64,000 bases of DNA from Octopus sinensis (Eukaryota), in assembly GCF_006345805.1 (NCBI RefSeq), contig NC_043005.1, positions 90,768,001 through 90,832,000 of the forward strand, in the 5' to 3' direction. Each line of letters opens with the position of its first letter. Position 1 is the stretch's first letter. The notes beneath the pieces were generated by a model, which did no database searches, had not been told where the DNA came from, and worked only from the letters and a program-made list of their open reading frames with translations. Shown here in pieces: positions 20,479 to 48,330 of the stretch. A program made the translations under genes and the position numbers.

Positions 20479-20479
20479 C

Positions 20480-30682: not shown

Positions 30683-31456
30683 GTATATATGTGTGTGTGT
30701 GTATATATGTTTGTGTGTCTGTGTTTGTTCCCCCAACATCGCTTGGCAACCGATGCTGGTGTGTTTACATCCCCATAACTTAGCGGTTTGGCAAAAGAGA
30801 CCGATAGAATGAGTACTTGGCTTACAAAGAATAAGTCCTGGAGTCGATTTGCTTGAGGAAAGGCGGTGCTCCAGCATGGCCACAGTCAAATGACTGAAAC
30901 AAGTAAAAGTGAAAAGAGGCCTTTTTGAGAGTATTTTTGAATCGTTAATGCATGTTAGCTGCACTTTCTTATAATGTGAATGAGCAAATTTTATGTTCAG
31001 ACTTAATTATATCATCTTGTATTATGCTGAAGATTACTTTCCATCCTTTGGAATCTCCTTTTGTTTTACTCTTTTACTTCTTTCAGTTATTTGACTGTGG
31101 CCATGCTGGAGCACTGCCTTTAGTCAAGCAAATCAACCCCAGGACTTATTCTTTGTAAGCCTAGTACTTATTCTATTGGTCTCTTTTGCCGAATTGCTAA
31201 GTTACGGGAACGTAAACACACCAGCATCGGATGTCAAGCGATGCTGGTGGGGACAAACAGACACAAACACACACACACACATATATATATACATATATAT
31301 GACGGGCTTCTTTCAGTTTCCATCTACCAAATCCACTCACAAGGCTTTGGTTGACCTGAGGCTATAGTAGAAGACATTTGCCCAAGGTGCCATGCAGTGG
31401 GACTGAACCTGGAACCATGAGGTTGGTAAGCCAGCTACTTACCACTCCTGCGCCTA
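27768..31456. mobile_element. Cluster of six SINE family B copies upstream of the first coding exon: 27768-28080(-), 28364-28716(+), 28742-29100(+), 29628-30000(+), 30524-30912(+), 31066-31456(-)
   Basis: Each matches the family B consensus, with varying CpG decay. Confidence 0.88.
29108..29603. mobile_element. Tc1/mariner (pogo-like) MITE with TA TSD
   Basis: TA|ccgtaaatcctcgagtataat ... attatactcgaggatttactg|TA. Confidence 0.85.
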
Positions 31457-31575: not shown

Positions 31576-31896
31576 ATGAAGAGAATATTTTGGAGCAAAT
31601 ACCGAATTCTTTTGTTGCTGCTGGGGATGACAGCTAGCTTATACATTCTATTTCTCTATTATTCCATGTCGAAACTGGATGCGGTCAACAGTAATTCCTT
31701 TCTGTTAGAAAGAAGAAATATTATTAAAGTGGCAGCATTGCATGATAAAATGCAGGAAATTCCAGAAATTTCAGTTGTTTCAAGAGTACAGCAATCCAGA
31801 CTGCACTCAAAAGTTAAAATAAGAGGTGTATTTCTTGATCAAATGCACCTTTATTTTCCAACAAAGAACAACACATTTCAATGTCTGCATTCCAAG
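31576..31896 (+). CDS. PRKCSH-like: Glucosidase II beta (PRKCSH)-like gene, coding exon 1: basic tail, hydrophobic anchor, stem, start of G2B/LDLa-like domain
   Basis: Acceptor cttccttgcag at 31531-32 (exon starts 31533); ATG 31576 MKRIFWSKYRILLLLLGMTASLYILFLYY...KIRGVFLDQMHLYFPTKNNTFQCLHSK then GTAAGC at 31897; 321 nt, phase 0. RGV...Y...F.C matches the PRKCSH N-terminus. Confidence 0.9.
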
Positions 31897-32084
31897 GTAA
31901 GCATTTTAACTCCTGTGGTATCAAGAAACACTTCTCGCTCATATGGGTCACTTCTTCTAATGTCTGTGCATACCTATAGATGTTTACACACACACAAACA
32001 CTTACACATGTAAAGACAGTATTCTTCTGGGACCGTGTATTAAATATGAAAAAAAAATAAGCAAGGATAAAGAAAATAAATTGA

Positions 32085-32420
32085 AATCTTGTGTAAAGTG
32101 GTTGGCATTAGGAAGGGCATCCAGCCATAGAAACCATGCTAAATCAGACTGGAGTTTGGTGCAGCTTGCCAGCCCTGATCAAACCATCCAACCCATGCCA
32201 GCATGGACAACAGACATTATAAGATTATCATCATCATCATCGTTTAACATCTGCTTTCCATGCTAGCATGGGTTGGACGATTTTGACTGAGGGCTGGCAA
32301 ACCAGATGGCTGCACCAGTGTCCAATCTTGATCTGGCAGAGTTTCTACAGCTGGATGCCCTTCCTAATGCCAACCACTCCGAGAGTGTAGTAGTTGCTTT
32401 TTACATGCCGCCGGCATGTA
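32085..32420. mobile_element. Tail-to-tail pair of RTE-tail repeats (family C)
   Basis: + copy ggaagggcatccagc...ccatgccagcatgg abuts a - copy through a shared (ATC)n tail at about 32228-32240. Confidence 0.85.
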
Positions 32421-32640
32421 AAAGATGATATATATATATATATATATATACACAAAATAAGAAAATGGAGAAATATATCTAAATCATTCATCAACTATCA
32501 GATAATACCGAATCATATACTTTATTAAAACACTACACAAGAGCATTAAGATTAGACATTAATACAGTACAATAATTACAATCAATATAATGAGATATAA
32601 CTAAATAAAATAACAAGATATAAAAATACATATACATTAT

Positions 32641-32754
32641 AACTGACAGCTGTTTCGGCCATGCAGATAGGTGTCTCATTTAACCTATATTAGCCATATA
32701 TTGCAGGTATAAATGAGACATTAACAAATATATCTTACGGCCTCTTCGGAGATT
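32641..32754 (-). ncRNA. Near-intact type I hammerhead ribozyme with an 84-nt extended stem II
   Basis: Minus strand: tct CCGAAGA GGCC[gt aagata...tgtctcattta...taaatgagaca...tatct gc at]GGCC GAAAC AGCT GTC ag; GUC site; palindromic ACAGCTGT stem III. Confidence 0.7.
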
Positions 32755-33399
32755 CTAATGTAAGTATGAGTACATACCCAAAAATCATTTACATATAAAT
32801 ATAAATATGGGTGCATATATACTCATATCCTTATATATATACACATACGTAATAATATAAATAATATAAATCAATATATATCAATAAACATAATAATGTT
32901 CTATATTGAATGTTACAGTTCCTCAACCAATATTAAGAAATTACAACAGTTATATTCATACTTAATGCAGACATATATAGTAAACAGTTCATTATATTAA
33001 TTTGTGTTACTTTACAAAAAGTCAATAATGCTAATACCAATACCGTTATCAATAACAATAATGTTATCAATATCAATATTATTACTAATAAAACAATACA
33101 TATATCTCACAATTAACAACATAGTAGCAACACTGAAGACCAATAAATACCACCATAGTACTATTCAAGGCAAATAGATATCTGCATATATATGCAATCA
33201 GTCAAATTCTTCTGTTTGCATGGTATTAATTTCCACAGATGCATTCGATTGGCCTATACTTTTAAATTTGAATTACAATAGATATTTTACGGTTAGTTAG
33301 CTATATGAATGTTGTAGTTCGCTTGAAGCATTGTGATATCAAAGAATGTGGAAAGAGGGAAAATAGACAGCTTCTAACAATGCCAAAAGTTTGATAAAA

Positions 33400-33438
33400 C
33401 CTTAATATATTTCAGGCTCAAAGTCCCATCTTCAGAAG
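33400..33438 (-). ncRNA. Decayed hammerhead motif
   Basis: CTGAAGA T GGG actttgag CCT GAAA T atat TA; changes are consistent with CpG decay of cccgaaac. Confidence 0.4.
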
Positions 33439-33859
33439 AGAAGAACAGTCAAAGAAAAGTCCAGTTGTGTAGGATCCATTACTCCATTTAAACTCTCCAG
33501 CATTTATAAACACTTAACCCCCATCATCCCTACCCTTTCCTCTTCCTAACCTTTCCTACTTATTATCCCTCAACACTTATTCACAATATTCACCCTGACC
33601 CTGTCTCTTGCTCACCCATACAATCTGTACCTTCCCTTGTCCCCTTTCACTTCTGCTCACCTCGTATCCTGAGGGTCCACTCTATCACCTAATCACTTCT
33701 TTTTCATCTCTTTCCAGCTCCACTCTCTCTCCTCAAAACCCTCTGGTTCCTTGTTTCTCACTTTAACCTTTCATCCCATAGCATAAAACTACCTTCCTCT
33801 CTACTACACCCCCACTTAACTGCAGAAGAGAAGCCATATGGTAACATCACTAGTGCTGG

Positions 33860-35385
33860 TGCCATGAAAAAGCACACAATACAAGCTGCAGAATCATTAG
33901 CATCAAGAAGGGCATCACAGTTCATGACTTTTGGAAGGGATACAATATCTACAAGGCTGTACAGAACATAGCAGTGGCATGGAATGATGTACAGAGCAAG
34001 CTATGAATAGTGTATGGAAGAAGCTATGCCCACAATTCATGAATGATTTTAAGGGGTTTGATAATGTTGCCATCAACAAAAACATTGTAACTATGCCAAG
34101 CCAGATGCTGGTTGCTGTCTTCAGACACACATTAGATCCTCTCAAACCATCCACCCATGCCAGCATGGAACATGGACATTAGTAATGATGACAATGTTGT
34201 GTGTGTGTGTGTGTGTCTTCCTGTCTTGAAACTGCGCAACAGTTATAAAACAAGCACCACCATAATGCAATCAATGTCATTTGTTTCCTGCATTACTTGA
34301 AAATCATGTCTGGTCATGAGGAAACTGATGAGGTTTGGCAACTGGATGGGTATCTGGCCAAAGAAAATTTGCCTGAACAAATTCCATCTGACCCATGCAA
34401 GCATGGAAAAGTAGACATTAAATCAATGATGAAGATGATATAGATCTCTGCTTGCGAAGACCTGTTGAGGCAAGTGAAATCAAATTTGATGACTGGCGTC
34501 CGTGCTAGCAGGGTGAAATGAAACCACACAAGTGTGATCCTTGACCGAGCGGCTAACCAGCTTCCGTGCCAGTGGAACTTAAAAGGCACCATTCGAGTGT
34601 GATCGTTACCAGCGTCGCCTTACTGGCACTCGAGCCCTGTGCTAGTAGGGTGCTAAGAGCACCATCCGAGTGTGATTGTTGCCAGAGCGGCTAACTGGCT
34701 TCCATGCTGGTGGCATGTGTAAAAGATTTGAGCGAGGTCATTGCCAGTACCGCCAGACTGGCCCCGTACCAGTGGCACATAAAAAAAGCACCCACTACAC
34801 TTTCAGAGTGGTTGGTGTTAGGAAGGGCATCCAGCAGTAGAAACTCTGCTAGATCAAGATTGAAGCCTGGTGCAGCCATCTGGTTCACCAGCCCTCAGTC
34901 AAATCATCCAATCTATTCTAGCATGGAAAGCGGACGTTAAACGATGATGATGATATGTGCACACACACACACATCTTTATATGAATAAACATAAAATACA
35001 GCTTCCATGCTGGTGGCACGTAAAATGCACCATTCGAGCGTGATTGTTACCAGCGTCGCCTTGCTGGCACTTGTGCCGGTGCCATGTGAAAATACATTCG
35101 AGCAAGGTTGTTGCCAGTGCCGCTGGACTGGCTCCTGTGCAGGTGACACGTAAAAAATACCGTTTGAACGTGGCTGTTGCCAGTACCGCCTGACTGACTC
35201 TCATGCCGGTGGCACGTAAAAGCACCCACTACACTCTCGGAGTGGTTGGCTTTAGGAAGGGCATCCAGCTGTAGAAACTCTGCCAGATCAGATTGGAGCC
35301 TGGTGCAGCCATCTGGTTCGCCAGTCCTCAGTGAAATCGTCCAACCCATGCTAGTATGTAAAGTGGACGTTAAACGATGATGACA
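33860..35385 (+). mobile_element. Tandem family C (RTE-tail, (GAT)n) repeats with internal GC-rich subrepeats
   Basis: Repeated gccagt.ccgcc..actggc..ccgtgccggtggcacgtaaaa-gcacc units and 3' ...ggacgttaaacgatgatga tails at about 34950 and 35380. Confidence 0.8.
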
Positions 35386-36233
35386 GTGGTCAAGAGTTCA
35401 AACTTTGATATGGCTATTGTGTCTCTGAGCAAAGCAAAACTCTTCTTGCATGATTTTGTCTTATTGATAAAAGGCTCCCTTCTTTTTAATTTTAATCTTA
35501 TGGTTAGCAGTAGGAAGGGTTCCTGTTACCACAAGTAATTATAAACAAGAAGAAGGTTATCAATCAAGTAAAATTATGTCTGTACTGAGGAAGAAAATTC
35601 ATTATCAATGACTATTTCTGGTGAAGAAAACAGGCGAGAGAGTCACGGAATTGTAAATAATTAAAAATAGAATTCATTGAGGAATGAGTTTGATCTTTGT
35701 TAGTTCAGTGGCAACATCAGACTTCTTTCAATTTTATTAGACCTCATCAGCAGTGCATAGTATAACCATTAATGTCTGATCTTTAGAATTTATATGTATA
35801 AAATCTAATAAGAATAACACCAATTTATAAATGTATTCGTTTACAATTTTGTTAATTATCTCTTTTGATACCAACTCACCTGAAACTGTCTTCGATTCTA
35901 TGAATCAAATTTCCTGTTTTAAATTGATCTGAATTAAAACCATCAATCAAATTTTTTTTAAATTTATATTTCAAAAACCAGCTTAATAATAACAATGGTG
36001 TTTTACTAAATTTTTCATTAACTTCAAAATTGATTAAAACAAATGATATGTATTTAAAAAAGATATGGTAATAAAAAGCTAGAATATCTATTTTAAAACC
36101 TTCACCTACAAAACTTTGTATTCAAATTTATTTATTTATCTACAGTGGACTGAATTATTTTTCATTGTGTTTTAATCCAAATGTTTATTTGAATGGTTTA
36201 CAAAATGACTAATATTTTGGCCTTTCATTTCAG

Positions 36234-36325
36234 CAACAGATTCCATACCAGCATTTGAATGATGATTTCTGTGATTGCAATGATAACTCTGATGAACCTG
36301 GAACTTCAGCTTGTCATTCATCAAA
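36234..36325 (+). CDS. PRKCSH-like: PRKCSH-like coding exon 2 (first LDLa-like repeat)
   Basis: cctttcatttcag|CAA...TCAAA|gtaag; QQIPYQHLNDDFCDCNDNSDEPGTSACHSS, matching IP...VNDDYCDC.DGSDEPGT.AC; 92 nt, phase 0 to 2. Confidence 0.95.
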
Positions 36326-38022
36326 GTAAGACATCTAAAATATACTATTTCAGTTTATTAGACTGCAACCATGCTGAGGTACTACTTTGAAGAATTTTTA
36401 GCAAATGAATCAACCCCATTACAGGCATACCTCACCTTAAGTCATTTTGATTTAAGTTGTTCTCAATTATACATCGGTTTTCAAAAATAATATATGAAAA
36501 AATAAAAGTCAAGTCATTTTACTCAACTTTACGTCTGTCTGATACAAATATTGGAATTGTAAAATCACTATTCAAAATTACTATAAATAGCTGAGTTTTG
36601 CATCAGGACACCCATGAGTTGGATTATCTCCATTTTGACAGGGATTTCCTCCTTTTTTTTTATTTTTTCGTCACAGCCTTAGAAATGATGTAGGGAAGCT
36701 TTTCAGGAAAAAAAACTTGGGAAAATTTTTGATCCCCTCCCCTTTTTTTTGTTTTTGCATTACACTCTTAAAAACGATAGGAGAATATTTTCAGGCAAAA
36801 AGGTGTGTGATTTAACTGTTGTTTCTAACACATCCAACGACCATCTGGTACGACCATCTCAGAATTGCATGAATACTTAAATTAAAACACAAACGAAATC
36901 TCAAAACCAGTTCTTTGCTTTAGCTTTTAAAAGCATAAATTAACATCATTAAAAACATCTGTAACTTAGAGTAAACTCATTAGGAGAAAGAGAAAAAAAC
37001 AACAAACAAATAAGTAAACACTACCACAGATTGTCCTACTGTATTCAAAATCAGAAGAAAAAAGAACTCGCATCTGACTTTAATAGACTACAAAGTAATA
37101 TTCATTGCACAATGTAATTTTTATTGCTGAAATTTGACCAATATTTCTCAAAGGAAAACAAAATTTATACATACAGGTAGAATATCCACTTGATAAAATT
37201 TAAATGTCACTCTCCATACATTGTTTAAACAGTGAGAGGGGAATAAACAATATTCTTAACCCAATGATCCAATGCTAGTTTTAGCCTCTAGAAGACTCAA
37301 TTTGGTGCATTTTTTTATAGAGATATATGTTTACTTATTAACTAGTTCGTCCATTTCTTGAAATTCTGACTCAAATTCAATATTTGAAGCCTTGGATCTG
37401 TGTTCCTACCATGTGGGAATACAGCAGTTTGACAAGTAGTGTCAGTACACCATCTTCTTTATTGACTTCATAATGCTCTTTGCTATATCATGGCCAGATT
37501 CAGCAATGACCATACAGGATTTGCAAGAAATTTTTCTTTATGTTATAAAAATCTTGAAGAAAATATATTCTTTTCTAAATGGAAATTGACAATAAGATTT
37601 TCACTTTTATATTTCATAATGATTATTTAACCTATCCCTATCAATTTTAATATCAAAATAAGCAAAAACATTCCTCTTCATGCCTATGATTTTTGGTGCA
37701 AATTGTGTTACAGCACTCCAGCACATTGAACTAGAATGAGGGCCACCATTCACCAGTCAAAAAAAGTTGTGGGGAGCAAACTTTGTGAATGGGTGGAAAT
37801 AACAGGGTAATTGAGGGACCCTGGCATGATATGTAAGTGTCGGATTTTGCATGAGAAGGAAGTTCACATCCAGAACTTTCAAATGATATATAATTTTCCA
37901 TGGAATAAATGTATTTTGTCATGAAAATGATCAAAGAAAAAGTGTATTTTTGCATGGTCAAAGTGTACTTGTCTCCCTTCTACAGTGCTCTATAGTAAAA
38001 GTATTACACATTCAAAGTTCTC

Positions 38023-38211
38023 TTTTACTTGTTTCAGTCATTTGACTGTGGCCATGCTGGAGCACCACCTTTAGTCGAGCAAATCGACCCCAGGACTTAT
38101 ACTTTGTAAGCCTAGTACTTATTCTATCGGTCTCTTTTGCCGAACCGCTAAGTTACGGGGACGTAAACACACCAGCATCAGTTGTCAAGCGATGTTGGGG
38201 GACAAACACAA

Positions 38212-38242
<31 letters not shown>

Positions 38243-38409
38243 CACGACGAGCTTCTTTCGGTTTCCGTCTACCAATCCCATTCACAGGGCTTTGGTCGGC
38301 CCGAGGCCATAATAGAAAACACTTGCCCCAGGTGCCACGCAGTGGGACTGAACCTGGAACCATGCGGTTCGTAAGCAAGCTACTTACCACACAGCCACTC
38401 TTACGCCTA
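38023..38409 (-). mobile_element. SINE family B
   Basis: Reverse-complement match. Confidence 0.9.
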
Positions 38410-38850
38410 TGAAATAAGAAAAAAAAACAAAAAAAAAACTTTTGTTGAATTAGTTGTAAGCACAATCTTAATTCCAGTTTATTAAATCTTCATGTTCATT
38501 TCCACTATTATAGTGAAGCCTGTTCTGAAATTGCTTCATTCACTATAGATAATTTTGCTGAATCAAATTTTGGGGACTACTTTTGATTTTTTTATCCTGT
38601 TCTGTGAGTGTATAGTCTCCAGTTTTGAGTTTGGATCTCTGTGCTCTTCTGCTGATAACCATTTTCTTAATTGTTGGAATTGATGTTTACACCAGACCAA
38701 GTAGCATTTTTCTCATTACATAAATTAAAATTACCTAACCATCTGTGAAGAGTGTCTAGCCAGTGTATAAAGAAATTTCAAAATGTTTTTGTATTGAATT
38801 TATAGTTATTACATACAGAGAGTGCAAAATTACTGCGTAGTGGGAGAATG

Positions 38851-39266
38851 GGATCTTTTCGGTTTGAACGGCAGTTTCTAACATAATTTCTAGGTAACTA
38901 AAAAATTTTAAACTTCGTATACTGGTAGAATGTGTTTATAAAACATCTTTTTCTCTTGGCTTTATTAAGAAAATTATAGTTTGTAAGATATTTGTTGTTT
39001 TCTTTTCTTCAATTTCTGCAATTTCAACCAATCACTGACGTCTATTGAGTTAAAAAAACATTCTGTGCTGTATGAATATGTCCCTCGTTTAAGAAACAGA
39101 TTGGGTTTATTTACATTTGTGAAGAAAAAAGGATACCCTTCCCCCACCCTTAACCCTAACCCTAAAACAGATTGAAATGCAATAGATTGATACTAGGGTC
39201 ATAATTATGGGTGGTAATTTCATATGACACCGCTAGAAAAAACTGCCGTTCAAACCGAAAAGATCC
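38851..39266. mobile_element. MITE with 27-bp TIRs and 8-bp TSD, copy 2 (opposite orientation, intronic)
   Basis: Perfect 27-bp TIRs; TSD GGAGAATG at 38843-50 and 39267-74. Confidence 0.92.
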
Positions 39267-40034
39267 GGAGAATGTGATATTAATGTAATCAAGTTCAAAT
39301 TCAAGTGTATTAAAATTTTGCCTCATTCTAGCTTTGTGGATTGAATAATGCTACTGGTGTTCAGACATTTCATTTGTTGGATGCAACAAGTTGGGAGACA
39401 AAGAGAATACACATATTTGAAAGTATCATTTGATGGTGTGTCCAGCATTTAGCTTCATGCTTGGCACATATAATTAAAATGTCCTGAAAGTAACCTTTGT
39501 TGGATAATAGTGTAATCAAAAAGAGGCCACTTCTTAGAGGAGACCTCCACAATGTTTTGTAGATATTGTGTTACACAGCTGTATAGAATTTCATACTGTT
39601 GTTGTGTGCACCAAGTGCTTAAAATTGTTGTCGAAAAAGTATGTGTGCGTATACATTGATTATATATAGAAAGGGAATATTCAAAGTAGAGAGTGTATAA
39701 TCATTGCATACAAAGAGTATATTAGTCATTGCGTAGAGAATGTATAAAGAAAGTGCATTGACTAGAGAGAATGTATAGTTATTCTATTCAGAGAGTTTAT
39801 ATATCCATTGCATAAAGTGAGTATACATACATTTTGTATGGCCAAGTGCTGTCAAACCATCCTACTCCTGCCAGTGTAGAAAGTGGATGTTAAATGATGA
39901 CGATGGCTATCGTGGTGGCAGCGACAACGACACAAGAGAGAGAGAGAGAGTGTAATCATTGTATAGAAAGAGTATATGTAGTCATTGTGTAGAGGGAGTA
40001 TATATGGAGAACATATTGATTCAATGTATATAGA

Positions 40035-40412
40035 ATGGGAGTGGCTGTGTGGTAAGTGGCTTGCTTACCAACCACATGGTTCAGGGTTCAGTCCCACTGC
40101 GTGGCATCTTGGGCACGTGTCTTCTACTATATCCAACCAAAGCCTTGTGAGTGGATTTGGTAGACGGAAACTGAAAGAAGCCTGTCATGTGTGTGTGTAT
40201 ATGTTTGTGTGTCTGTGTTTGTCCCCCCAACATCGCTTGACAACTGATGCTGGTGTGTTTACGTCCCCGTAACTTAGCGGTTCGGCAAAAGAGACCGATA
40301 GAATAAGTACTAGGCTTACAAAGAATAAGTCCTGGGGTCGATTTGCTCGACTAAAAGCGGTGCTCCAGCATGGCTGCAGTCAAGTGACTGAAACAAGTAA
40401 AATAGTAAAAGA
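40035..40412 (+). mobile_element. SINE family B
   Basis: Family B match. Confidence 0.9.
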
Positions 40413-40510
40413 GATAATGCATACTGTCATTGAGTTCTTGACATTTAGTGCTTTAATACAAAACTTAATGAAAAATTTCCTGCTGTAGATTATTTTGCTT
40501 TCTTCTACAG

Positions 40511-40650
40511 GTTTTATTGCACTTTTCAGCTGGAAGGATTGAAACCTCAGTTTACTTGGTCGAGTCGTGTACAAGATGGTATTTGTGATTGCTGTGATGG
40601 TAGTGATGAATGGTCAAATGAAGTTTTACCTGATAACATCCGAATTAAAG
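40511..40650 (+). CDS. PRKCSH-like: PRKCSH-like coding exon 3 (second LDLa-like repeat)
   Basis: tcttctacag|G...AAAG|gtaata; (K)FYCTFQLEGLKPQFTWSSRVQDGICDCCDGSDEWSNEVLPDNIRIK; 140 nt, phase 2 to 1. Confidence 0.95.
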
Positions 40651-41264
40651 GTAATACTGTCCAAATCTTAGCAATTTGCCATTGTATCTCTATCATATTC
40701 TACACCAGCCTGAGCCTCTCCTATATTTCACTCCATGTGGCATATTACAGTGACCACAATTTTGATTGACCCAGCCCATCTCACCCCCTCCAGTGTCCTC
40801 TGAGGGCATGTCCCAACATGTCTTCGCCATCATTTCTCTCACTATCATTCTCTAACTCTCTCTCCTTTGTTTTCCAACTGGGGCATCCGTGTACCTACTC
40901 TACAGCAAGACACCTTAAATCTCTCAACTGGCACAAAGCCACACCTCCTCAATATTACTCCCTCCCTCCCGGTTGAGAGGCTTTTTGCCTTGCCAGGTAC
41001 TTGGTGACCCCTGTCAGTGCTGGTGCTACATAAAAGCACCAGTACACTCTGTAAAGTGGTTGGTGTTAGGAAGAGCATCCGGCTGTAGAAACCATGCTAA
41101 AACAATCAATGGAACCTGGTGCAGCTCCTGGTCTTATTCTTTTCCTAGGAAAGAAGCTTGGGTAAAGTTGGACAGTTACAGAGTCAGATTGTAAAAGACA
41201 AATTATAAAGGATGGTATGCTGAAGCATTCAGGTACTGTGGTGGGAGGATAGAAAGAAAGTAAT

Positions 41265-41668
41265 TCAGTAAGGCAGAAACGTTAGCATGCCGGGCAAAAT
41301 GCTTAGCAGTATTTTGTCTGCTGCTACGTTCTGAGTTCAAATTCCGCTGAGGTTGACTTTGCCTTTCATCCTTTCAGGGTCGATTAAATAAGTACCAGTT
41401 ATGCACTGGGGTCGATATAATCGACTTAATCCATTTGTCAGTCCTTGTTTGTCCCCTTTGTGTTTAGCCCCTTGTGGGTAGTAAAGAAATAGGTATTTCA
41501 TCTGCTGCTACATTCTGAGTTCAAATTCCACCAAGGTCGACTTTGCCTTTTATAATTTCGGGGTCAATAAATTAAGTACTAGTTACGCACTGGGGTTGAT
41601 ATAATCGACTTAATCCATTTGTCTGTCTTTGTTTGTCCCCTCTTTGTGTAGCCACTTGTGGGCAGTAA
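41265..41668 (+). mobile_element. SINE family A dimer (CpG-decayed)
   Basis: Same aaagaaata|ggtattt junction as the 1.4-kb copy. Confidence 0.9.
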
Positions 41669-41671
41669 CAA

Positions 41672-41951
41672 CGTCATCGTCGTTGTTGTTGTTGTTCAGG
41701 TCTCTGCTTGGAATTGAACTCGGAATCTTGGGGTTAAGAGCATGGGCTACTAACCCAAAGATTCCAAGTTCGATTCCAAGCAGTGACCATAATAGTAATA
41801 ATAACAACAACAACATTGAAAAATACCTTAGGAATGAGAACCTAGGTTCGAAATTTCCCCCAAGAAACCTAATGAAGGCTGGAGGGTATATCAGCCGAAA
41901 CGTTGTGTTAACAACGAGGACAAATATCCGTCAATTGTAAATAATGTACAT
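41672..41951 (+). mobile_element. Same composite element, copy 2, with an inverted duplication of its 5' head
   Basis: Same head/(AAT)n/tail junction and 3' end as copy 1; 41682-41736 is the reverse complement of about 41751-41815. Confidence 0.8.
41864..41908 (+). ncRNA. Minimal type I hammerhead ribozyme motif (core mutated)
   Basis: CTAATGA (CUGAUGA with G5A) + A, stem II ggctg/cagcc, GAAAC-GT-T, gtgt; the copy at 376-420 retains the acac arm of stem I. Confidence 0.6.
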
Positions 41952-42693
41952 AATTCCTCATCTCTTAAATATAGAACTGTATTTTTGTTTTATTTTGCCT
42001 GTCTCTATATATATTAGCTATGCATTCTTCATTATTTCCATGTACCGAACTCACTGTGCCCCACTAAGAGTAGAATCCTGTTTTAAAGCGCACCACTTCA
42101 AATTACTGTTCACTTCCTTCAAAGGCAAAAGCTTGAAGCATAAGACTTCCATTCCACATAGCAAGAAAATATATTAAACATTTCCTTAAATTCTTTTTCT
42201 AATACCTGTACAGACTCTTGCTAGTTTCCTTGCATTCTGGAAATATTTTAAAATATTGTAATTATATAGAAGGCTTGTACCTAATTGTTGGAATTGTGTC
42301 CAAATATATTTACTCATACAATGAGTGACATTAGGATCTCTTAAGGGCCTTTTTTTTTTTGGAAACCTATTATGAGGAAAAAACTAACTAGTTTCATTGT
42401 TATTTAACAATTACTCTGGAATTTTCACATCAAAATTTATTCACAATTATGTTATCTTAGCATCTAAGAAGGCCTCTGAGACAAGGAGGGGAGACCAATG
42501 GTGGTCTCAGTATCAGTTGTGGTTTGAATGAGATCACATGATATGACAGTTCCACTGTTTTGCTGAAGAAGAATTAAGTAGAGCGTAGTATAGGGATACA
42601 AGGATGTAGAGTTAGTATTGGAGGCGAGGCAATTATATATAAAGTCATTATATATAAATTCTTATATATTATATATATATATAAATTTTTTAG

Positions 42694-42923
42694 GGCGGCG
42701 AGCTGGCAGAATCGTTAGCACATCGGGTGAAATGCTTAGCGGTATTTCGTCTGCCATTACATTCTGAGTTCAAATTCTGCCGAGGTCGACTTTGCCTTTC
42801 ATTCTTTCGGGGTCGATAAATTAAGTACCAGTTATGCACTGGGGTCGATGTAACCAACTTAATCAGTTTGTCTGTCCTTGTTTGTCCCCTCTGTGTTGAG
42901 CCTCCTGTGGGCAATAAAGAAAT
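42694..42923 (+). mobile_element. SINE family A monomer just upstream of coding exon 4
   Basis: Family A match ending about 35 bp before the 42958 acceptor. Confidence 0.9.
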
Positions 42924-42957
42924 AATTATATACAAATTTTTGTGCTTGTTCTTACAG

Positions 42958-43112
42958 ACCCTGCTTTAGGAGGTGCAGTGATGCATGCTCCCTGTGCTAA
43001 TTGGTGCCTAACAATTCTTCAGAAAGTTCATCGGAAGAAAATGATGCTACTAGAAGGCCGTAAACATAAAGCTCCCTATTTGGCAGCAGCAGCTAATGTG
43101 GAAAACAAACTG
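42958..43112 (+). CDS. PRKCSH-like: PRKCSH-like coding exon 4 (C.N.C motif and short helix)
   Basis: ttcttacag|AC...CTG|gtaagt; (D)PALGGAVMHAPCANWCLTILQKVHRKKMMLLEGRKHKAPYLAAAANVENKL; 155 nt, phase 1 to 0. Confidence 0.9.
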
Positions 43113-43247
43113 GTAAGTACCTAATTAGTTGCATTGAAATCAATAATAACAAAACCACTCAGAGAACACAAACCACTTCTGACTAAGCCACAAAAATATT
43201 AATGTTATTTCTAAATGTTTTATGTTTCATGCAACATTTGCAGTACT

Positions 43248-43535
43248 ACTTTTGCGGCCGATGCCAGCGCCGCCTTGACTGGCTTCCGTGCCGGTGGCAC
43301 GTAAAAAGCACCATCCGATCATGGCCGTTGCCAACCTCGCCTGGCACCTGTGCCAGTGGCATGTAAAAAGCACCCACTACACTCACGGAGTGGTTGGCGT
43401 TAGGAAGGGCATCCAGCTGTAGAAACACTGTCAGATCAGACTGGAGTCTGGTGCAGTCTCCTGGCTTCCCAGATCCCGATCGAACCATCCAACCCATGCT
43501 AGCACGGAAAACGGACGTTAAACGATGATGATGAA
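43248..43535 (+). mobile_element. Family C repeat
   Basis: Same 3' tail; further pieces at about 40985-41130 and 47750-47890. Confidence 0.85.
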
Positions 43536-43953
43536 GCTAATAAATTTGATAATACAAACTTTAGTAGTACTTATCCCCACTTAAATGCAGATACTCTGTT
43601 AGAACAAACTATACCGCAGTAGATACCATGAGAAAAACTCTCATATTGGCCCCTAGTACAAAATGCACTCTTATTTATATTGCTAGCAGGGAGATAAATC
43701 CCCATGACCTCCAGATCGCATGATTTCAACCTTCCTTGCTCTTATCAATGACAGGCACTCAATCACTAGAGGAAGCAGCAACTCATCCTCCTGTCAGCGG
43801 TATATAGTAAGAAAAATGCCAGAACAGGCACTGGTATCATGATTAGCTTGTTAAAAATATTTAGTAGAATTGGTTTTTTGGATTTTTGCTCTCGTTCCTA
43901 ACATTTTCCTCAGTTATTCAATTCAACACCATACCTTTTTCTTCTTTTCTTAG

Positions 43954-44193
43954 AGCTATGGTCCTGAAGGTGTGTTTTACAAACTAAGTCTGAAATGTTT
44001 TCAAATTCAACTTCCTCCTTATGACTACAATATATGTCCTTTCAAGAAATGTACTCAGCAAAAGTTTCCACAACCAGTGATATCAATGGGACAGAAACCT
44101 GTGTGGGAGAAAATGAGACCTGGTTCTTATGTCTTAAAGATGACAGGAGGTAGTGCTCAGTATTGCCCAGAAAACAGAGATCGTCTTTCATGG
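43954..44193 (+). CDS. PRKCSH-like: PRKCSH-like coding exon 5 (MRH domain, main part)
   Basis: cttcttttcttag|AGC...TGG|gtaggt; SYGPEGVFYKLSLKCFQIQLPPYDYNICPFKKCTQ...YCPENRDRLSW; YGP.G.F..L...C...Y.Y..CPF is the PRKCSH/GNPTG MRH signature; 240 nt, phase 0. Confidence 0.95.
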
Positions 44194-44393
44194 GTAGGTA
44201 AATTATTCGATAAACATTTACTTTGTATTATGTATGCCAGCTGGAGGGAGTGACGTGTCACTTGTGTATGTTTGTTTCATGTTTTGCACATACATTCACT
44301 TGCACAACATTTTTGTGACATAGCATGATAAATGGTACAAATTGTAATTAGTACTTTTATTAGTACTATATTATGTTTAATAGTATAAAGTCC

Positions 44394-44795
44394 CCAGGAG
44401 TGGCTGTGTGGTAAGTAGCTTGCTTAACAACCACATGGTTCCGGGTTCAGTCCCACTGCGTGGCATCTTGGGCAAGTGTCTTCTACTATAGCCTCGGGCC
44501 GACCAAAGCTTTGTGAGTGGATTATGGTAGATGGAAACTGAAAGAAGCCCATCGTATATATGTATATATATATATGTATGTGTGTGTATGTCTGTGTTTG
44601 TTCCCCTAGCATTGCTTGACAATCGATGCTGGTGTGTTTATGTCCCCATCACTTAGCAGTTCGGCAAAAGAGACCAATAGAATAAGTACTAGGCTTACAA
44701 AGAATAAGTCCCAGGGTCGATTTGCTCGGCTAAAGGCAGTGCTCCAGCATGGCCGCAGTCAAATGACTGAAACAAGTAAAAGAGTAAAAGAGAGT
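44394..44795 (+). mobile_element. SINE family B
   Basis: Family B match. Confidence 0.9.
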
Positions 44796-45006
44796 AAAGA
44801 GTAAGGAAAATGGGGATAATGTATTTATTACAGAGAATAATTGCATGAGAAATACTTTTAGCGAATGGGTAGGTTGTGTGTTTGTAACTGAGATGTTCAA
44901 TCATACTGTCTTGTTGTTCTATATATGTATCCTAATATACAATCTCATCCTTTCCTTGTTTTCATTTGTCATCTTCCATGGACACCCTACAGATAACACT
45001 GTTTAA

Positions 45007-45226
45007 CCCTTTTGTTACTGTATATATTTTGAAATGCTCTGTGTTTCTTTCACTCACTTTAAATATAACAAAGTATTTAGTAAAATAACTTAGTTATCAT
45101 TCAGCTAATGTTAGGAACATAAATTGTGACTTAAGTTCAGTGGAAGATTTCAATTCAAAACTTATGAAAACAAGACATTTGTACTGAGATCCAGAGCCGG
45201 TTTCAGCCAGGTTGGTAAGGAAAGGG
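45007..45226. mobile_element. piggyBac-type MITE (TTAA TSD)
   Basis: TTAA|cccttttgttac ... gtaaggaaaggg|TTAA; decayed relative at about 35856-36080. Confidence 0.75.
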
Positions 45227-45513
45227 TTAACAAAATTTTGATTTTTCTTTTGTCTTTGGTCAGTAAGTGTTATTTCCTATTTGCTTCCATCTAGAAATCA
45301 AGGAAGTGACTACTATTCCCTTCAAACTTTGCTTTTCTAACCTGGTCATCAATGTTTCGAAACTGACCTATTTTCAATTACAATTCAGGCAGATTATTTG
45401 CCGTTAATATTAGCCATTTTTCATACTTTCTAGGAAAGTAGGGAATAACAGTTGCTACCCAAGGACAAAAATTGTGTTACACAATGTAATAGCTTGTGGT
45501 ATTTTTTACTCAG

Positions 45514-45730
45514 TGGCAAGCTGGCAGAAACGTTAGCATGCCAGGCGAAATGCTTAGCAGTATTTCGTCTGCCGTCACATTGTGAGTTCAAATTCCGCTG
45601 AGGTCGACTTTGCCTTTCATCCTTTCGGGGTTGATAAATTAAGTACCAGTTACGCACTGGGGTCAATGTAATCGACTTAATCCTTTGTTTGTCCACTCTA
45701 TGTTTAGCACCTTGTGGGTAGCAAAGAAAT
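45514..45730 (+). mobile_element. SINE family A monomer (CpG-decayed)
   Basis: Family A match. Confidence 0.9.
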
Positions 45731-46193
45731 AGGCATTTTTTACCCAACACTCATTGTCCATTCTTATCACACAGTCTTTTCTCCTGCACATTCTCTTGTT
45801 CCAAGGATACACCACTGACTGTGGAAATTTTTACTGAGTATATTTCTTACATGAACATAACTGATAAACATAAGGAATAATTTGAATTTGAAAGTACTCT
45901 AGATTTAATTTATAACTATTAGCTAATATCTTTAAAACTGCTCTCCTACCTCACACTCTCTCTTTCATGCTGGTTATCATTATACATACAACAAATCATG
46001 CTTATATCATTTCTCTCCAACCTCTTTAAGTCTATGTCCACTACCCATGTCTCCTTACTATATAGCTTCACACTCTTTGTACGCTCTACCTTCTACATAG
46101 AAATACCTTGGTGCCAACTTCCTTAAACTTCTATTCCTTCCTTTCTACTGTTTGACTAAATCACTAAGACAACATAACCTATTAACTACATTT

Positions 46194-46501
46194 GTGGAGG
46201 CACATGGCCTAGTGGTTAGAGCAGCAGACTCGCAGTCGAGGGATTGCAGGTTCGAATCTCAGACCGGGCGATGTGTGTGTTTATGAGCGAAACACCTAAG
46301 CTCCACGTGGATCCAGCAGAAGGTAATGGTGAACTTCTGCTGAATCTTTCGCCACAACTTTCTCTCACTCTTTCCTCCTGCGTCATGCAGCTCACCTGCG
46401 ACAGACCGGCGAACCGTCCATGTGGGGAACTTATACGCCAAGGAAACCGGGAAACTGGCCCTTATGAGCCAGGCATGGCTCGAGAAGGAACAAACAAAAA
46501 C
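46194..46501 (+). mobile_element. tRNA-derived SINE family D with 13-bp TSD
   Basis: A box tggcctagtgg, B box ggttcgaatc; TSD ATTAACTACATTT at 46181-93 and 46502-14. Confidence 0.9.
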
Positions 46502-47311
46502 ATTAACTACATTTAGTAAACCATCTGAGCACTTTGTTTTGCAATTGTTTTCATTGTATATCAGACATTTAAAGTTGTGATTTCTAGAAAGTGTGCTAGA
46601 AACTTCACTGCATCTTTTGCTAGCTGTTGCATGGTATACACAGTATCAAGTCCTTAATTACTTGCTACTTCTCAAACAAAGTTTTACTCCAGATGGTGCT
46701 AGGGCATGTTGCTCTCTGCACTAATTTGTACTTTGGTGTTTGTGATGTTAACCTTTCAGCTGTTCCATGTACATAATTTTCTTGCAGCACTTTCAAAGAT
46801 TCTACCACAAGAATAAGGTCTTTTGCATGTTAAACTCCTCAAGAAGAACCTGTTCTGATCTCTTGTATATATCGCCCAAAGAACTATAATGAAGCAGAGA
46901 ACAGTGTCCTGAGGAATGTTTGCTTGTGTACTAAATTCATTTAATTCACTGCCAGCCTTAACCATATTTCATCATTGTACATGACTTAACACAACTCTAA
47001 CAAGATATCCCACTCCATCTTGTTTCCTTTGAGTTTACTAGAATATAGAATGTAGGAAAAACTTCTCTAATCGTTTCTAGAAAACAAATCAAAGTCGAAT
47101 GGTCTGCTTTTAGATTGGAATATCTTGTGCAGTTATCTCATTAGAAATATGAAATGAATTAAATATAGTACTCACTATATTAAATATTTCATTAAGTCAT
47201 TAACTTATGTTGTCTTTTCTTTATTGTTCAATTATTTGTAATTACCTTTTTAATGTTTATTGCATTAAACATAGTAACACTAAATTATTGGCATCTCTGA
47301 AAAATTGATTG

Positions 47312-47612
47312 AATGGCCCTGTGGTTAGGGCAGCGGACTCGCGGTTGTAGGATCGCAGTTTCGATTCCCAGACCGAGCGTTTTGAGTGTTTATTGGTCAA
47401 AAACACCTAAAGGTCCACGAGGCTCCGGCAGGGGGTGGTGGCGGTCCCTGCTGTACTCTTTCGCCACAACTTTCTCTCACTCTTTCTTCTGTTGGCCTGC
47501 TCACTTAGCCAGTGGGGTGGTGTCATTTGAAGGCTAAAACAATGCAAAGCGCATTGTGATCAGCGATGTGTAGCAACATCTGATAGCCTGGTCAGTCACA
47601 GTGATCACGGTG
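47312..47612 (+). mobile_element. tRNA-derived SINE related to family D, flanked by a 135-bp duplication
   Basis: Shares aaacacctaa...tctttcgccacaactttctctcactcttt with 46194-46501 but has a different 3' part. Confidence 0.85.
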
Positions 47613-48234
47613 ATATTAAATATTTCATAAAATGATTAAATTAAGTCATTAACTTATGTTGTCTTTTCTTTATTTGTAATTACCTTTTTAATGTTTATTG
47701 CATTAAATGTAGTAACACTAAATTATTGGCATCTCTGAAAAATTGATTGTATTTGGTGTTAGGAAGGGCATCCAGCCATAGAAATTATGCCAAATCAGAC
47801 TGGAGTCTGGTGCGTGCAGCCTTCCATCTTGCCAGCCCTGGTCAAACTGTCCAACTCAATGGACAATGGATGTTAAATGATGATGATGATTTGTTGCTTT
47901 TGCATAAGCCCTTACTTACACCACTTTAATTAATTATTGATAAAACTTAAATAATTTTTTTTTTTTATTGGCAATTCTATTTAGAAAGAAAATAATTGAA
48001 GACAAACCTGGTTAAAATAAATAAAAATTTCTTTTGCAGATTTAGTAAATGGGTGTCAATCAGAATTCCCCTGTAGACTAACTTCTTCTTCTTCCAGGAA
48101 TATGCTCTTTTACACATTTATAATTCAGTTTGACACATCTATACAAATGTGTAAGAGTTACAAATATATTTGAAATTTAACTCACTCAAAAAAAATAATT
48201 TATCTAATTATCTGATTTTTCTTGAATTCTGCAG

Positions 48235-48330
48235 ATAACTTTTGAATGTGGAGTTGTTGATAAAGTGAAATCAATACACGAAGATGCTTGTGAATATTAT
48301 ATCAAATTCAGTACACCTGCTGCATGCTGA
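48235..48330 (+). CDS. PRKCSH-like: PRKCSH-like last coding exon (end of MRH domain, stop)
   Basis: cttgaattctgcag|ATA...TGA; ITFECGVVDKVKSIHEDACEYYIKFSTPAAC*, matching C....E...CEY....TPAAC. Total CDS 1044 nt = 347 aa + stop. Confidence 0.95.
   Translation: MTFECGVVDKVKSIHEDACEYYIKFSTPAAC

What the first reader, a model, noticed from the sequence alone, without database searches (positions are those of the whole stretch)
31576..48330. Membrane-anchored, HDEL-less glucosidase II beta paralog: a minimal LDLa-pair plus MRH lectin adaptor
Seen in sequence: the spliced 347-aa protein begins MKRIFWSKYR-ILLLLLGMTASLYILFLYY (short basic tail plus about 19 hydrophobic residues). A stem of about 50 aa follows, then both acidic Cys repeats (LNDDFCDCNDNSDE; VQDGICDCCDGSDE), about 50 aa of linker, and an MRH domain ending exactly at TPAAC*. 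Established: canonical PRKCSH/GII-beta is a soluble ER protein with a cleaved signal peptide, EF-hands, an acidic region and C-terminal HDEL. Its N-terminal domain binds GII-alpha, and its MRH binds mannose through Q/R/E/Y residues, all apparently present here (CTQ, DRLS, HED, CEY). Inference: the tail-TM-stem layout resembles a type II Golgi glycosylation protein. This could be a second, membrane-tethered adaptor that recruits a GH31 glucosidase, or acts like GNPTG in lysosomal-enzyme sorting, outside the ER.
Basis: partly seen in the sequence, partly recalled or inferred. Interest (0 to 1): 0.72.

Follow-up and report, generated by a model that had tools for sequence, protein, structure and literature searches.

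The report
Membrane-anchored glucosidase II beta paralog
This octopus gene encodes a short, membrane-anchored relative of the glucosidase II beta subunit that lacks an ER-retrieval tail; it belongs to an old, conserved invertebrate gene lineage that has been sequenced many times but apparently never studied.

Summary

- **Layout:** a basic tail, a 19-22 residue hydrophobic segment, a disordered stem, a glucosidase II beta N-terminal (G2B) domain, a helical linker, and an MRH lectin domain ending at TPAAC-stop.
- **Not a truncated PRKCSH:** the same genome has a separate canonical gene ending in RDEL.
- **Orthologs:** about 85 database clusters share the layout, from molluscs, annelids, nemerteans, a brachiopod, a rotifer, echinoderms and tunicates. 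None ends in an xDEL retrieval signal. No named vertebrate, arthropod, nematode or cnidarian member appeared.
- **Phylogeny:** they form one supported clade, sister to animal canonical GII-beta.
- **Transcripts:** assemblies from a related cephalopod confirm the start and stop codons.
- **Conserved residues:** the MRH Q/R/E/Y residues and the two G2B glutamates needed for alpha-subunit binding in fission yeast are (near-)invariant. The GII-beta-specific MRH tryptophan is replaced by proline.

Type II membrane topology is well supported by heuristics. The proposed role as a membrane tether for a GH31 glucosidase is inference, and the compartment is unknown. I found no literature on this lineage.

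Verdict: a real, uncharacterised variant of a known family, of moderate interest.

The parts
31576..31896 (+). Exon 1 (aa 1-107). It encodes the basic cytosolic tail (aa 1-10; 31576-31605), the hydrophobic signal-anchor candidate (aa 11-32; 31606-31671), the poorly conserved stem (aa 33-~80) and the start of the G2B domain (RGV...FQCLHSK).
   Evidence: One search gives the model and the donor TCCAAG|gtaagc. Searches give the hydrophobicity and flank charges. In one search, AlphaFold2 predicts a helix over aa 8-56 with pLDDT above 90 for aa 11-30 and below 50 for aa 45-79. One search shows an in-frame stop upstream with no earlier ATG, both in the window and in cephalopod transcript contigs.
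36234..36325 (+). Exon 2 (aa 108-138). It encodes the first LDLa-like acidic Cys repeat, QQIPYQHLNDDFCDCNDNSDEPGTSACHSSK, including the invariant E128.
   Evidence: In one search, C120, D121, C122, D124, D127, E128, P129, T131, A133 and C134 are invariant across 30 orthologs. maps S. pombe E73 to this glutamate.
40511..40650 (+). Exon 3 (aa 138-184). It encodes the second LDLa-like repeat, FYCTF...SSRVQDGICDCCDGSDEW, including the invariant E171, and the start of a clade-specific insertion.
   Evidence: In one search, V158, D160, G161, C163-G168 and E171 are invariant. maps S. pombe E114 to E171. One search shows a ~19-aa insertion relative to canonical GII-beta.
42958..43112 (+). Exon 4 (aa 185-236). 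It encodes the rest of the insertion, the CxxxC motif (C197, C201) and the linker helix with conserved G218 and Y225.
   Evidence: Searches show the acceptor ttcttacag| and donor CTG|gtaagt. One search shows the invariant residues. In one search the helix spans aa 201-229 with pLDDT 81-95.
43954..44193 (+). Exon 5 (aa 237-316). It encodes the N-terminal two thirds of the MRH domain, with Q271 (44056-44058), P308 in place of the canonical Trp, and R313 (44182-44184).
   Evidence: In one search pLDDT exceeds 90. The exon ends at the same position as the last intron of the canonical octopus gene.
48235..48330 (+). Exon 6 (aa 317-347 plus the stop). It encodes the C-terminal MRH strands with E332 (48280-48282) and Y337 (48295-48297). 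The protein ends ...TPAAC, followed directly by TGA, with no xDEL tail.
   Evidence: One search shows E332, C335, Y337, P344, A345 and C347 invariant. Searches show the C-termini of 38 orthologs.

Best explanation
The gene encodes a single-pass type II membrane protein: N-terminus in the cytosol, the rest in the lumen of the secretory pathway. It is an ancient paralog of the glucosidase II beta subunit.

**What is kept and what is missing.**
- It keeps the G2B domain, which in canonical GII-beta holds the catalytic GH31 alpha subunit.
- It keeps an MRH lectin domain with the mannose-binding Q/R/E/Y residues.
- It lacks the coiled-coil, EF-hand and acidic middle region and the C-terminal xDEL signal.
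- In place of a cleaved signal peptide it has a basic tail, a conserved roughly 20-residue membrane anchor and a flexible stem.

**Most likely mechanism.** It acts as a membrane-tethered adaptor. The G2B domain would hold a GII-alpha-type glucosidase at the luminal face of an early secretory membrane. The MRH domain would bind high-mannose N-glycans and present them to the enzyme. Localisation would depend on the anchor and tail rather than on KDEL-receptor retrieval.

**Shown versus inferred.**
- Shown: the gene model, the domain content, the absence of an xDEL tail, the separate canonical gene, a conserved clade, and conservation of the key residues.
- Strongly inferred: type II topology.
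- Inferred only: binding to an alpha subunit, the glycan ligand, and the compartment (ER membrane or Golgi).
For: **Gene model and domains.**
- Searches give the spliced model and the G2B and MRH matches.
- The G2B region is about 48% identical over 100 residues to mouse GII-beta (counted from the alignment).
- It covers all of the 83-88 residue beta fragment deposited with the alpha subunit in 5f0e and 5hjo.

**A separate canonical gene.** The canonical PRKCSH lies at G000:C23:12173136-12216525 and ends ...NRDEL.

**Conserved layout (38 sequences analysed).**
- About 85 short-type clusters are found.
- The tail is 7-47 aa with 2-13 Lys+Arg.
- The uncharged run is mostly 20-29 aa, and the best 19-residue Kyte-Doolittle mean is 1.9-3.3.
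- The N-flank is more positive than the C-flank in 36 of 38.
- The best 19-residue hydrophobic window starts as far in as residue 51.
- None ends in xDEL, whereas 21 of 22 canonical sequences end in a KDEL-like xxEL motif.

**Anchor conserved in sequence.** The anchor has a conserved sequence across phyla (the FQxFS motif, with Gln in 86% of sequences). This is not expected of a signal peptide that is cut off.

**Phylogeny.** The short clade is monophyletic at 96/94. Styela, Haliotis and bivalves carry both types.

**Key residues.**
- Q271 is nearly invariant, and R313, E332 and Y337 are invariant.
- E128 and E171 are invariant. They correspond to S. pombe E73 and E114, whose mutation abolished alpha-subunit retention and G1M9 trimming (PMC3103398; primer sequences read).
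- 37 of the 49 G2B positions conserved in canonical GII-beta are also conserved here.

**Structure.** AlphaFold2 gives a confident transmembrane helix, a disordered stem and a confident MRH domain. Foldseek matches MRH domains of GNPTG, OS-9 and GII-beta.

**Transcripts.** Three contigs from separate sequencing runs encode the 347-aa cephalopod ortholog without interruption, with in-frame stops in the 5'UTR.
Against: - No tool here tests protein-protein binding, glycan binding or localisation.
- The second alpha-interacting region reported for mammalian beta (ID2, residues 273-400, as summarised in PMC12732852) has no counterpart here.
- Twelve G2B positions conserved in canonical beta are not conserved in this clade. 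They include Asn143, invariant in canonical beta, and Gly137, 95% conserved. The partner could therefore have changed.
- The Trp invariant in the canonical MRH motif CW(N)GP is Pro in 89% of the clade. From my memory of the S. pombe MRH structure work, that Trp contributes to glycan binding, so specificity may differ.
- In the octopus sequence alone, T-A-S at aa 19-21 could be read as a signal-peptidase site. SignalP and DeepTMHMM were not available.
Confidence: 0.55

Rival explanations
1. It is a membrane-bound MRH lectin that no longer binds GII-alpha. The G2B domain would serve another partner, or act only as a Ca2+-stabilised spacer. The protein would work as a cargo, sorting or quality-control receptor for mannose-type glycans, including the reader's GNPTG-like idea.
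For: - The MRH domain is the most confidently folded part, and its best structural match is the GNPTG MRH domain (7s69_A, E=2.4e-8).
- Canonical-invariant G2B positions (N143, G137) and the GII-beta-specific Trp are lost.
- The ID2 region is absent.
- The conserved polar Gln in the anchor suggests a membrane partner.
Against: - The G2B domain is the most strongly conserved part by sequence (E=1e-32; 37 of 49 canonical-conserved positions kept).
- Both glutamates needed for alpha-subunit retention in S. pombe are kept.
- GNPTG has no G2B domain.
- This protein has no DMAP-binding domain.
Confidence: 0.27
2. The N-terminal hydrophobic segment is a cleaved signal peptide. The mature protein would be a soluble, secreted or post-ER luminal lectin that escapes the ER because it has no xDEL tail.
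For: - The basic n-region followed by a hydrophobic core also fits a signal peptide.
- The octopus sequence has small residues (T-A-S) at aa 19-21.
Against: - The candidate cleavage site is not conserved in orthologs.
- The hydrophobic run is mostly 20-29 residues, against 9-26 in canonical signal peptides.
- In Lottia, Lineus, Owenia and several unnamed sequences the best hydrophobic window begins 28-51 residues from the N-terminus.
- The second half of the segment is conserved across phyla.
- AlphaFold2 models one continuous high-confidence helix.
Confidence: 0.12
3. It is a gene-model artefact: a truncated or mis-spliced canonical PRKCSH, or a pseudogene.
For: - The gene spans 16.8 kb of repeat-rich sequence.
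- The genome does contain a disrupted PRKCSH-like copy elsewhere (C12467).
Against: - All splice sites are canonical and the frame is intact.
- The canonical gene is on another chromosome.
- The same architecture recurs in about 85 clusters across six or more phyla.
- It also occurs in uninterrupted transcript contigs.
Confidence: 0.02

Closest known systems
Glucosidase II beta subunit (PRKCSH / GII-beta / S. pombe Gtb1)
   Same: - A G2B domain with two LDLa-like Cys/acidic repeats, about 48% identical to mouse GII-beta.
- A CxxxC motif after the G2B domain.
- A C-terminal MRH domain with Q/R/E/Y and the ...TPAAC ending of the domain.
- The last intron at the same position as in the octopus canonical gene.
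   Different: - About 20-residue membrane anchor with a basic tail instead of a short signal peptide.
- A 50-180 aa variable stem.
- A ~19-aa insertion after the second repeat.
- No coiled-coil, EF-hand or acidic region (the ID2 region).
- No xDEL tail.
- The canonical MRH Trp is replaced by Pro.
- It forms its own clade.
GNPTG (gamma subunit of GlcNAc-1-phosphotransferase)
   Same: - A small protein of about 300 aa.
- An MRH domain, which is the best structural match (7s69_A; rmsd 2.5 A over 112 columns).
- No ER-retrieval tail.
   Different: - GNPTG has no G2B domain. From my own knowledge of the family, it is a soluble protein with a DMAP1-binding region, but I did not test this.
- This protein has no DMAP-binding match.
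- Its strongest conservation is in the G2B domain.
Teleost 'glucosidase 2 subunit beta-like' (about 430-460 aa)
   Same: It carries the same automatic database name and is shorter than standard PRKCSH.
   Different: - The teleost proteins have short signal peptides and end in HSEL or HNEL.
- They group with canonical GII-beta, outside the short clade, in the tree.
- They are a different paralog.
Type II Golgi/ER glycan-processing enzymes (for example glucosidase I and glycosyltransferases)
   Same: The overall layout: a short basic cytosolic tail, a signal anchor and a flexible stem leading to a luminal functional domain.
   Different: - There is no catalytic domain; the luminal part is an adaptor plus a lectin.
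- Localisation was not tested.

Membership tests
Glucosidase II beta subunit family (PRKCSH) | N-terminal G2B domain with two LDLa-like Cys/acidic repeats (Pfam PF12999) | tested here: met
   - PF12999 matches at E=1e-32, 113.8 bits against a cut-off of 34.9.
- Mouse and human GII-beta match at E~1e-34.
- The Cys and acidic residues are invariant in 30 orthologs.
Glucosidase II beta subunit family (PRKCSH) | C-terminal MRH domain with the mannose-binding Gln, Arg, Glu and Tyr | tested here: met
   - PF13015 matches at 34.2 bits against a cut-off of 23.
- Q271 is nearly invariant; R313, E332 and Y337 are invariant.
- The MRH fold is confirmed by Foldseek.
Glucosidase II beta subunit family (PRKCSH) | GII-beta-specific Trp in the MRH loop (motif CW-N/Q-GP) | tested here: not met
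   The Trp is present in 100% of 22 canonical sequences. It is Pro308 here and Pro in 89% of the short clade.
Glucosidase II beta subunit family (PRKCSH) | Central coiled-coil, EF-hand pair and acidic stretch (includes the reported ID2 region) | tested here: not met
   - No EF-hand family matches at E<=1.
- Only about 62 residues separate the G2B and MRH domains.
- Precomputed Pfam lists show EF-hand families for canonical hits and none for short-clade hits.
Glucosidase II beta subunit family (PRKCSH) | C-terminal H/K/R-DEL-type ER-retrieval signal | tested here: not met
   The protein ends ...TPAAC-stop. None of 38 orthologs ends in xDEL, against 21 of 22 canonical sequences with a KDEL-like xxEL ending.
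Glucosidase II beta subunit family (PRKCSH) | Cleaved N-terminal signal peptide and a soluble luminal protein | tested here: inconclusive
   Heuristics favour an uncleaved signal anchor: segment length, conservation, distance from the N-terminus, flank charges and the AlphaFold2 helix. No dedicated predictor or experiment was available.
Glucosidase II beta subunit family (PRKCSH) | Forms a heterodimer with the GH31 alpha subunit | not testable with these tools
   The evidence is indirect only. E128 and E171, equivalent to S. pombe E73 and E114, are invariant. The genome has at least six apparently intact GH31 loci, which I did not classify.
GNPTG | An MRH domain followed by a DMAP1-binding region, with no G2B domain | tested here: not met
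   The MRH domain matches (7s69). There is no DMAP-binding match, and a strong G2B domain is present.
Type II single-pass membrane proteins of the secretory pathway | Short positively charged N-terminal tail, one hydrophobic segment of about 20 residues, and a luminal C-terminal domain | tested here: met
   - The tail carries +4 charge.
- The uncharged run is 22 residues, and the best 19-residue hydrophobicity mean is 2.11.
- The N-flank is more positive than the C-flank in 36 of 38 orthologs.
- The luminal identity of the C-terminal part follows from its disulfide-rich LDLa and MRH domains (inference).
Type II single-pass membrane proteins of the secretory pathway | Residence in a defined compartment (ER membrane or Golgi) | not testable with these tools
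   Arg-rich tails such as RRKYR and RRRRR could fit either an ER-retrieval or a Golgi-retention pattern. The octopus tail (MKRIFWSKYR) fits neither strictly.

The most novel reading that the evidence does not exclude
Many non-vertebrate, non-ecdysozoan bilaterians may run a second glucosidase II holoenzyme. In it the catalytic alpha subunit would be held on a type II membrane anchor by this beta paralog and would not depend on KDEL-receptor retrieval. That would allow glucose trimming or glycan surveillance in a different place (the membrane-proximal ER or the Golgi) and with different glycan selectivity (the MRH Trp-to-Pro change). This arm of N-glycan processing would have gone unseen because the main model animals, vertebrates and ecdysozoans (flies, nematodes), appear to lack it.
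Probability: 0.22. Interest if true: 0.75.

Novelty: new variant of a known kind. Interest (0 to 1): 0.5.

Why it matters
Glucosidase II sets the timing of the calnexin/calreticulin folding cycle. Its beta subunit is textbook-defined as a soluble protein retained by HDEL.

- **A different way to localise the same parts.** A conserved membrane-anchored paralog without a retrieval signal means the same adaptor and lectin modules were redeployed with a different localisation logic. This appears to have happened before protostomes and deuterostomes split.
- **Why it has been missed.** No named vertebrate, arthropod or nematode member turned up, which probably explains why the lineage has gone unnoticed.
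- **It is testable.** Ciona and sea urchins carry it and are tractable for experiments.
- **Annotation.** Automatic names such as 'glucosidase 2 subunit beta(-like)' currently merge three different things: canonical beta, the teleost HSEL-type paralog, and this membrane-anchored lineage.

Tried and rejected
- **MRH domains in this genome.** I searched the genome with PF13015 to count MRH genes and look for GNPTG. Only the intronless C12467 copy was found, because exon splitting removes the sensitivity. Nothing can be said about GNPTG.
- **Exact look-up of the octopus protein** in assembly collections. Nothing is on record, so I relied on transcript contigs of a 52%-identical cephalopod ortholog instead.
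- **Counting GH31 loci to look for a dedicated alpha partner.** At least six apparently intact loci and two disrupted ones were found. I did not classify them as GANAB-like or otherwise, so this is uninformative as it stands.
- **Alpha/beta interface residues in the literature.** The mouse structure paper is not in the library. The Chaetomium paper covers the alpha subunit only. I obtained only the ID1/ID2 summary and the S. pombe mutagenesis results.
- **Source of the deepest-branching member, P0133.** It comes from an unnamed JGI environmental contig, so the age of the lineage beyond Bilateria is unresolved.
- **Teleost 'beta-like' proteins as vertebrate orthologs.** Rejected: they end in HSEL or HNEL and fall with canonical beta.
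- **Shared intron positions between the two octopus genes.** Only the last (MRH) intron coincides. The G2B introns differ.

Full report
**1. The observation**

Joining six exons gives a 1044-nt open frame and a 347-aa protein. The exons are 31576-31896, 36234-36325, 40511-40650, 42958-43112, 43954-44193 and 48235-48330. Every junction is a canonical AG|...|GT. The frame upstream of the ATG is closed by a stop 36 codons earlier, with no intervening ATG.

The window lies at C9:90768001-90832000 of a 2.72-Gb assembly. The protein is 95% identical to Octopus bimaculoides LOC106881055. The genome is therefore an Octopus species close to, but not, O. bimaculoides.

**2. What the protein is made of**

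- Pfam finds PF12999 (glucosidase II beta N-terminal, or G2B, domain) over aa 78-173 at E=1e-32. It finds PF13015 (MRH domain) over aa 233-347 at E=2.5e-8. It finds nothing else, and in particular no EF-hand.
- Against PDB sequences the best matches are mouse and human glucosidase II beta at E~1e-34. Counting from the printed alignment, the G2B region is about 48% identical over 100 residues.
- Our residues 97-180 cover the 83-88 residue beta fragments deposited with the alpha subunit in 5f0e and 5hjo.
- AlphaFold2, run with a 30-sequence alignment, gives mean pLDDT 76.8. The regions are:
  - a long N-terminal helix with pLDDT above 90 over aa 11-30;
  - a disordered stretch at aa 45-79 with pLDDT below 50;
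  - a moderately confident G2B region;
  - a confident helix at aa 201-229;
  - an MRH beta-sandwich with pLDDT above 90.
- Foldseek against the PDB returns MRH domains: GNPTG 7s69_A first, then OS-9, GII-beta, XTP3-B and the mannose-6-phosphate receptors. It also returns the G2B fragment of GII-beta.

**3. It is a separate gene, not a broken PRKCSH**

Searching the same genome with PF12999 and with a canonical abalone GII-beta finds three loci.

- **This window.**
- **A multi-exon canonical gene** at C23:12173136-12216525 (- strand). It matches abalone residues 37-542, and its last exon ends ...VTPASCAKPTPSPTTNRDEL-stop. A canonical beta subunit retained by a KDEL-type signal is therefore present.
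- **A compact, intron-poor copy** on C12467. It has a frameshift inside the second Cys repeat and stops in the MRH region, and it ends ...SDEL. It is probably a processed pseudogene.

The short and canonical octopus genes share the position of the last intron: DRLSW|ITFECG against DRSVK|VHFDCG. Their G2B introns are at different positions.

**4. Relatives**

A single-sequence search and then a profile search recover about 85 clusters of 290-460 aa proteins. These score 230-470 bits, ahead of canonical beta subunits at about 220 bits.

- Named sources:
  - many molluscs (cephalopods, bivalves, gastropods, a chiton);
  - annelids (Owenia, Dimorphilus);
  - nemerteans (Lineus, Tubulanus);
  - the brachiopod Lingula;
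  - the rotifer Seison;
  - echinoderms (crinoids, urchins, sea stars);
  - tunicates (Ciona, Phallusia, Styela, Clavelina).
- No named vertebrate, arthropod, nematode or cnidarian sequence falls in this set.
- All carry only automatic names.

I analysed 38 of them against 22 canonical sequences.

| Feature | Short type (38) | Canonical (22) |
|---|---|---|
| N-terminal tail | 7-47 aa, 2-13 Lys+Arg | 0-13 aa |
| Uncharged hydrophobic run | mostly 20-29 aa | 9-26 aa |
| Best 19-residue Kyte-Doolittle mean | 1.9-3.3 | 1.0-2.6 |
| First CDC motif at residue | 91-231 | 49-68 |
| C-terminus | ...TPAAC (ascidian-type sequences add a few residues, the longest being nine); none xDEL | 21 of 22 end in a KDEL-like xxEL motif (HDEL, HSEL, HNEL, HEEL, HTEL, REEL) |

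In the short type the N-flank is more positive than the C-flank in 36 of 38. The most hydrophobic 19-residue window starts at residue 9-51. The interval between anchor and G2B domain is poorly conserved.

The anchor aligns across phyla and has a conserved sequence: an aromatic residue, then FQxFS, with Gln in 86% of sequences. A signal peptide that is removed would not be expected to keep its sequence in this way.

An IQ-TREE analysis of 60 sequences over 307 columns puts all short-type proteins in one clade at 96/94 support. That clade is sister to animal canonical beta when rooted on fungal and protist sequences. Styela, Haliotis and bivalves have one gene of each type, so the duplication predates the protostome-deuterostome split.

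The teleost 'glucosidase 2 subunit beta-like' proteins group with canonical beta, outside the short clade, and end in HSEL or HNEL. They are not orthologs.

**5. Transcript evidence**

The exact octopus protein is not on record in the assembly collection. A 347-aa cephalopod ortholog (52% identity) is encoded without interruption on three 1.3-2.0 kb contigs from three separate sequencing runs. Since the octopus gene is split over 16.8 kb, these are transcript assemblies.

In all three, the reading frame upstream of the ATG contains stops and no earlier ATG, and the stop codon follows TPAAC directly.

**6. Functional residues**

- **MRH domain.** Q271 is nearly invariant. R313, E332 and Y337 are invariant. 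These are the positions of the MRH sugar-binding residues. The S. pombe MRH mutant used in PMC3103398 was E456Q/Y462F, which has the same Glu-to-Tyr spacing as in most members of this clade.
- **G2B domain.** The S. pombe mutations E73A and E114A abolished complementation of G1M9 trimming. They also reduced ER levels of the alpha subunit to those of a beta-null strain (PMC3103398). The published primers show that these are the Glu of ...SDEPG in repeat 1 and of ...CCDGSDE in repeat 2. Those are E128 and E171 here, and both are invariant.
- **Overall G2B conservation.** 37 of the 49 G2B positions conserved in canonical beta are also conserved in the short clade.

Differences that argue for caution:
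- Twelve canonical-conserved G2B positions are relaxed, including Asn143 (invariant in canonical beta) and Gly137.
- A ~19-aa insertion follows the second repeat.
- The Trp invariant in the canonical MRH motif CW(N)GP is Pro in 89% of the clade.
- The region equivalent to ID2, a second alpha-binding region reported for mammalian beta (summarised in PMC12732852), is absent.

**7. How it most likely works**

The protein is inserted as a type II signal-anchor protein with the tail in the cytosol. It projects a flexible stem, a G2B domain, a helix and an MRH domain into the lumen.

By analogy with canonical beta, the G2B domain would hold a GH31 GII-alpha-type catalytic subunit. The MRH domain would dock on mannose arms of N-glycans. 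Because there is no xDEL tail, localisation must come from the anchor and tail.

The basic cluster next to the membrane (RRKYR-like) could fit either ER-retrieval or Golgi-retention patterns and is not decisive. I rate the topology as very likely, the adaptor role as the best single hypothesis, and the compartment as unknown.

Rivals:
- a membrane lectin whose G2B domain has a different partner;
- a cleaved, soluble protein;
- a gene-model artefact, which is essentially excluded.

**8. Comparison and novelty**

The protein belongs to the GII-beta superfamily by both of its domains. It fails four features of canonical GII-beta: the EF-hand and acidic region, the xDEL tail, the MRH Trp, and probably the cleaved signal peptide. 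It also forms its own old clade. It is not GNPTG-like beyond the shared MRH fold.

Seven full-text searches found no paper describing a membrane-anchored GII-beta paralog. The terms covered 'glucosidase 2 subunit beta-like', 'PRKCSH-like', and MRH or G2B together with transmembrane or invertebrate. The library does not hold all journals, so this is absence of evidence in what could be searched.

I classify the finding as a new variant of a known kind. The octopus gene is one ordinary member of an undescribed but widely sequenced lineage.

Noticed in passing
G000:C12467:307754-309258 (- strand; locus L015): A third PRKCSH-like locus in the same genome. It is compact and apparently intronless. 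It has a frameshifting insertion inside the second Cys repeat (VNDGLC...DCCDGSDE) and stops in the MRH region, and it ends ...FISDEL. It is very diverged from the canonical C23 gene and is probably an old processed pseudogene. Disrupted DEAH-helicase-like frames lie next to it.
   Followed up: partly
window 31069-31445, 38001-38420, 40039-40405 (-), 44398-44784 (-), plus 8 more copies between 9077 and 57358: There are twelve copies of a roughly 390-bp SINE-like dispersed repeat, 69-89% identical to each other, each with an internal (TA/CA)n microsatellite. One ends about 130 bp upstream of the start codon, and one ends about 105 bp upstream of exon 3. ARAGORN finds no tRNA-like head.
   Followed up: partly
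window 3098-3992 (+): Two overlapping frames look like a mariner/Mos1-type transposase: an HTH region, then ...QDETWVHHYDPE...LLQDNAPVH.... The frameshift suggests a decayed copy. I identified this by eye; no family search was run.
   Followed up: no
window 20136-20537 (+) and 20860-21405 (-): Open frames resembling reverse-transcriptase and LINE-type fragments. They were not classified.
   Followed up: no
L019 and L021 versus L020 (cephalopod transcript contigs): The 5'UTRs are the same for about 45 nt before the ATG and then diverge completely. This suggests alternative first (non-coding) exons in the ortholog. In the window, a candidate acceptor (ccttgcag|TGGAAC) lies about 50 nt upstream of the ATG.
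   Followed up: partly
P0122 (Dimorphilus gyrociliatus, 774 aa): The short-type luminal part (stem, G2B, MRH, ending SPAAC) is fused behind a DOMON plus cytochrome b561 multi-pass region. This is either a merged gene model or a natural replacement of the single anchor.
   Followed up: no
P0084, P0087, P0114, P0116, P0118 (teleosts): Teleosts have a second, shorter beta paralog (about 430-460 aa) ending in HSEL or HNEL. It carries the same automatic name as the invertebrate membrane-anchored lineage but groups with canonical beta, outside the short clade.
   Followed up: partly
G000: C9497:180541-181561 and C1794:1081927-1083047: Two GH31 (alpha-glucosidase family) loci are contiguous but full of stop codons, probably processed pseudogenes. 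At least six other GH31 loci look intact. Three of those have long uninterrupted frames: C12:68.17 Mb, C3:78.53 Mb and C18:1.02 Mb.
   Followed up: no
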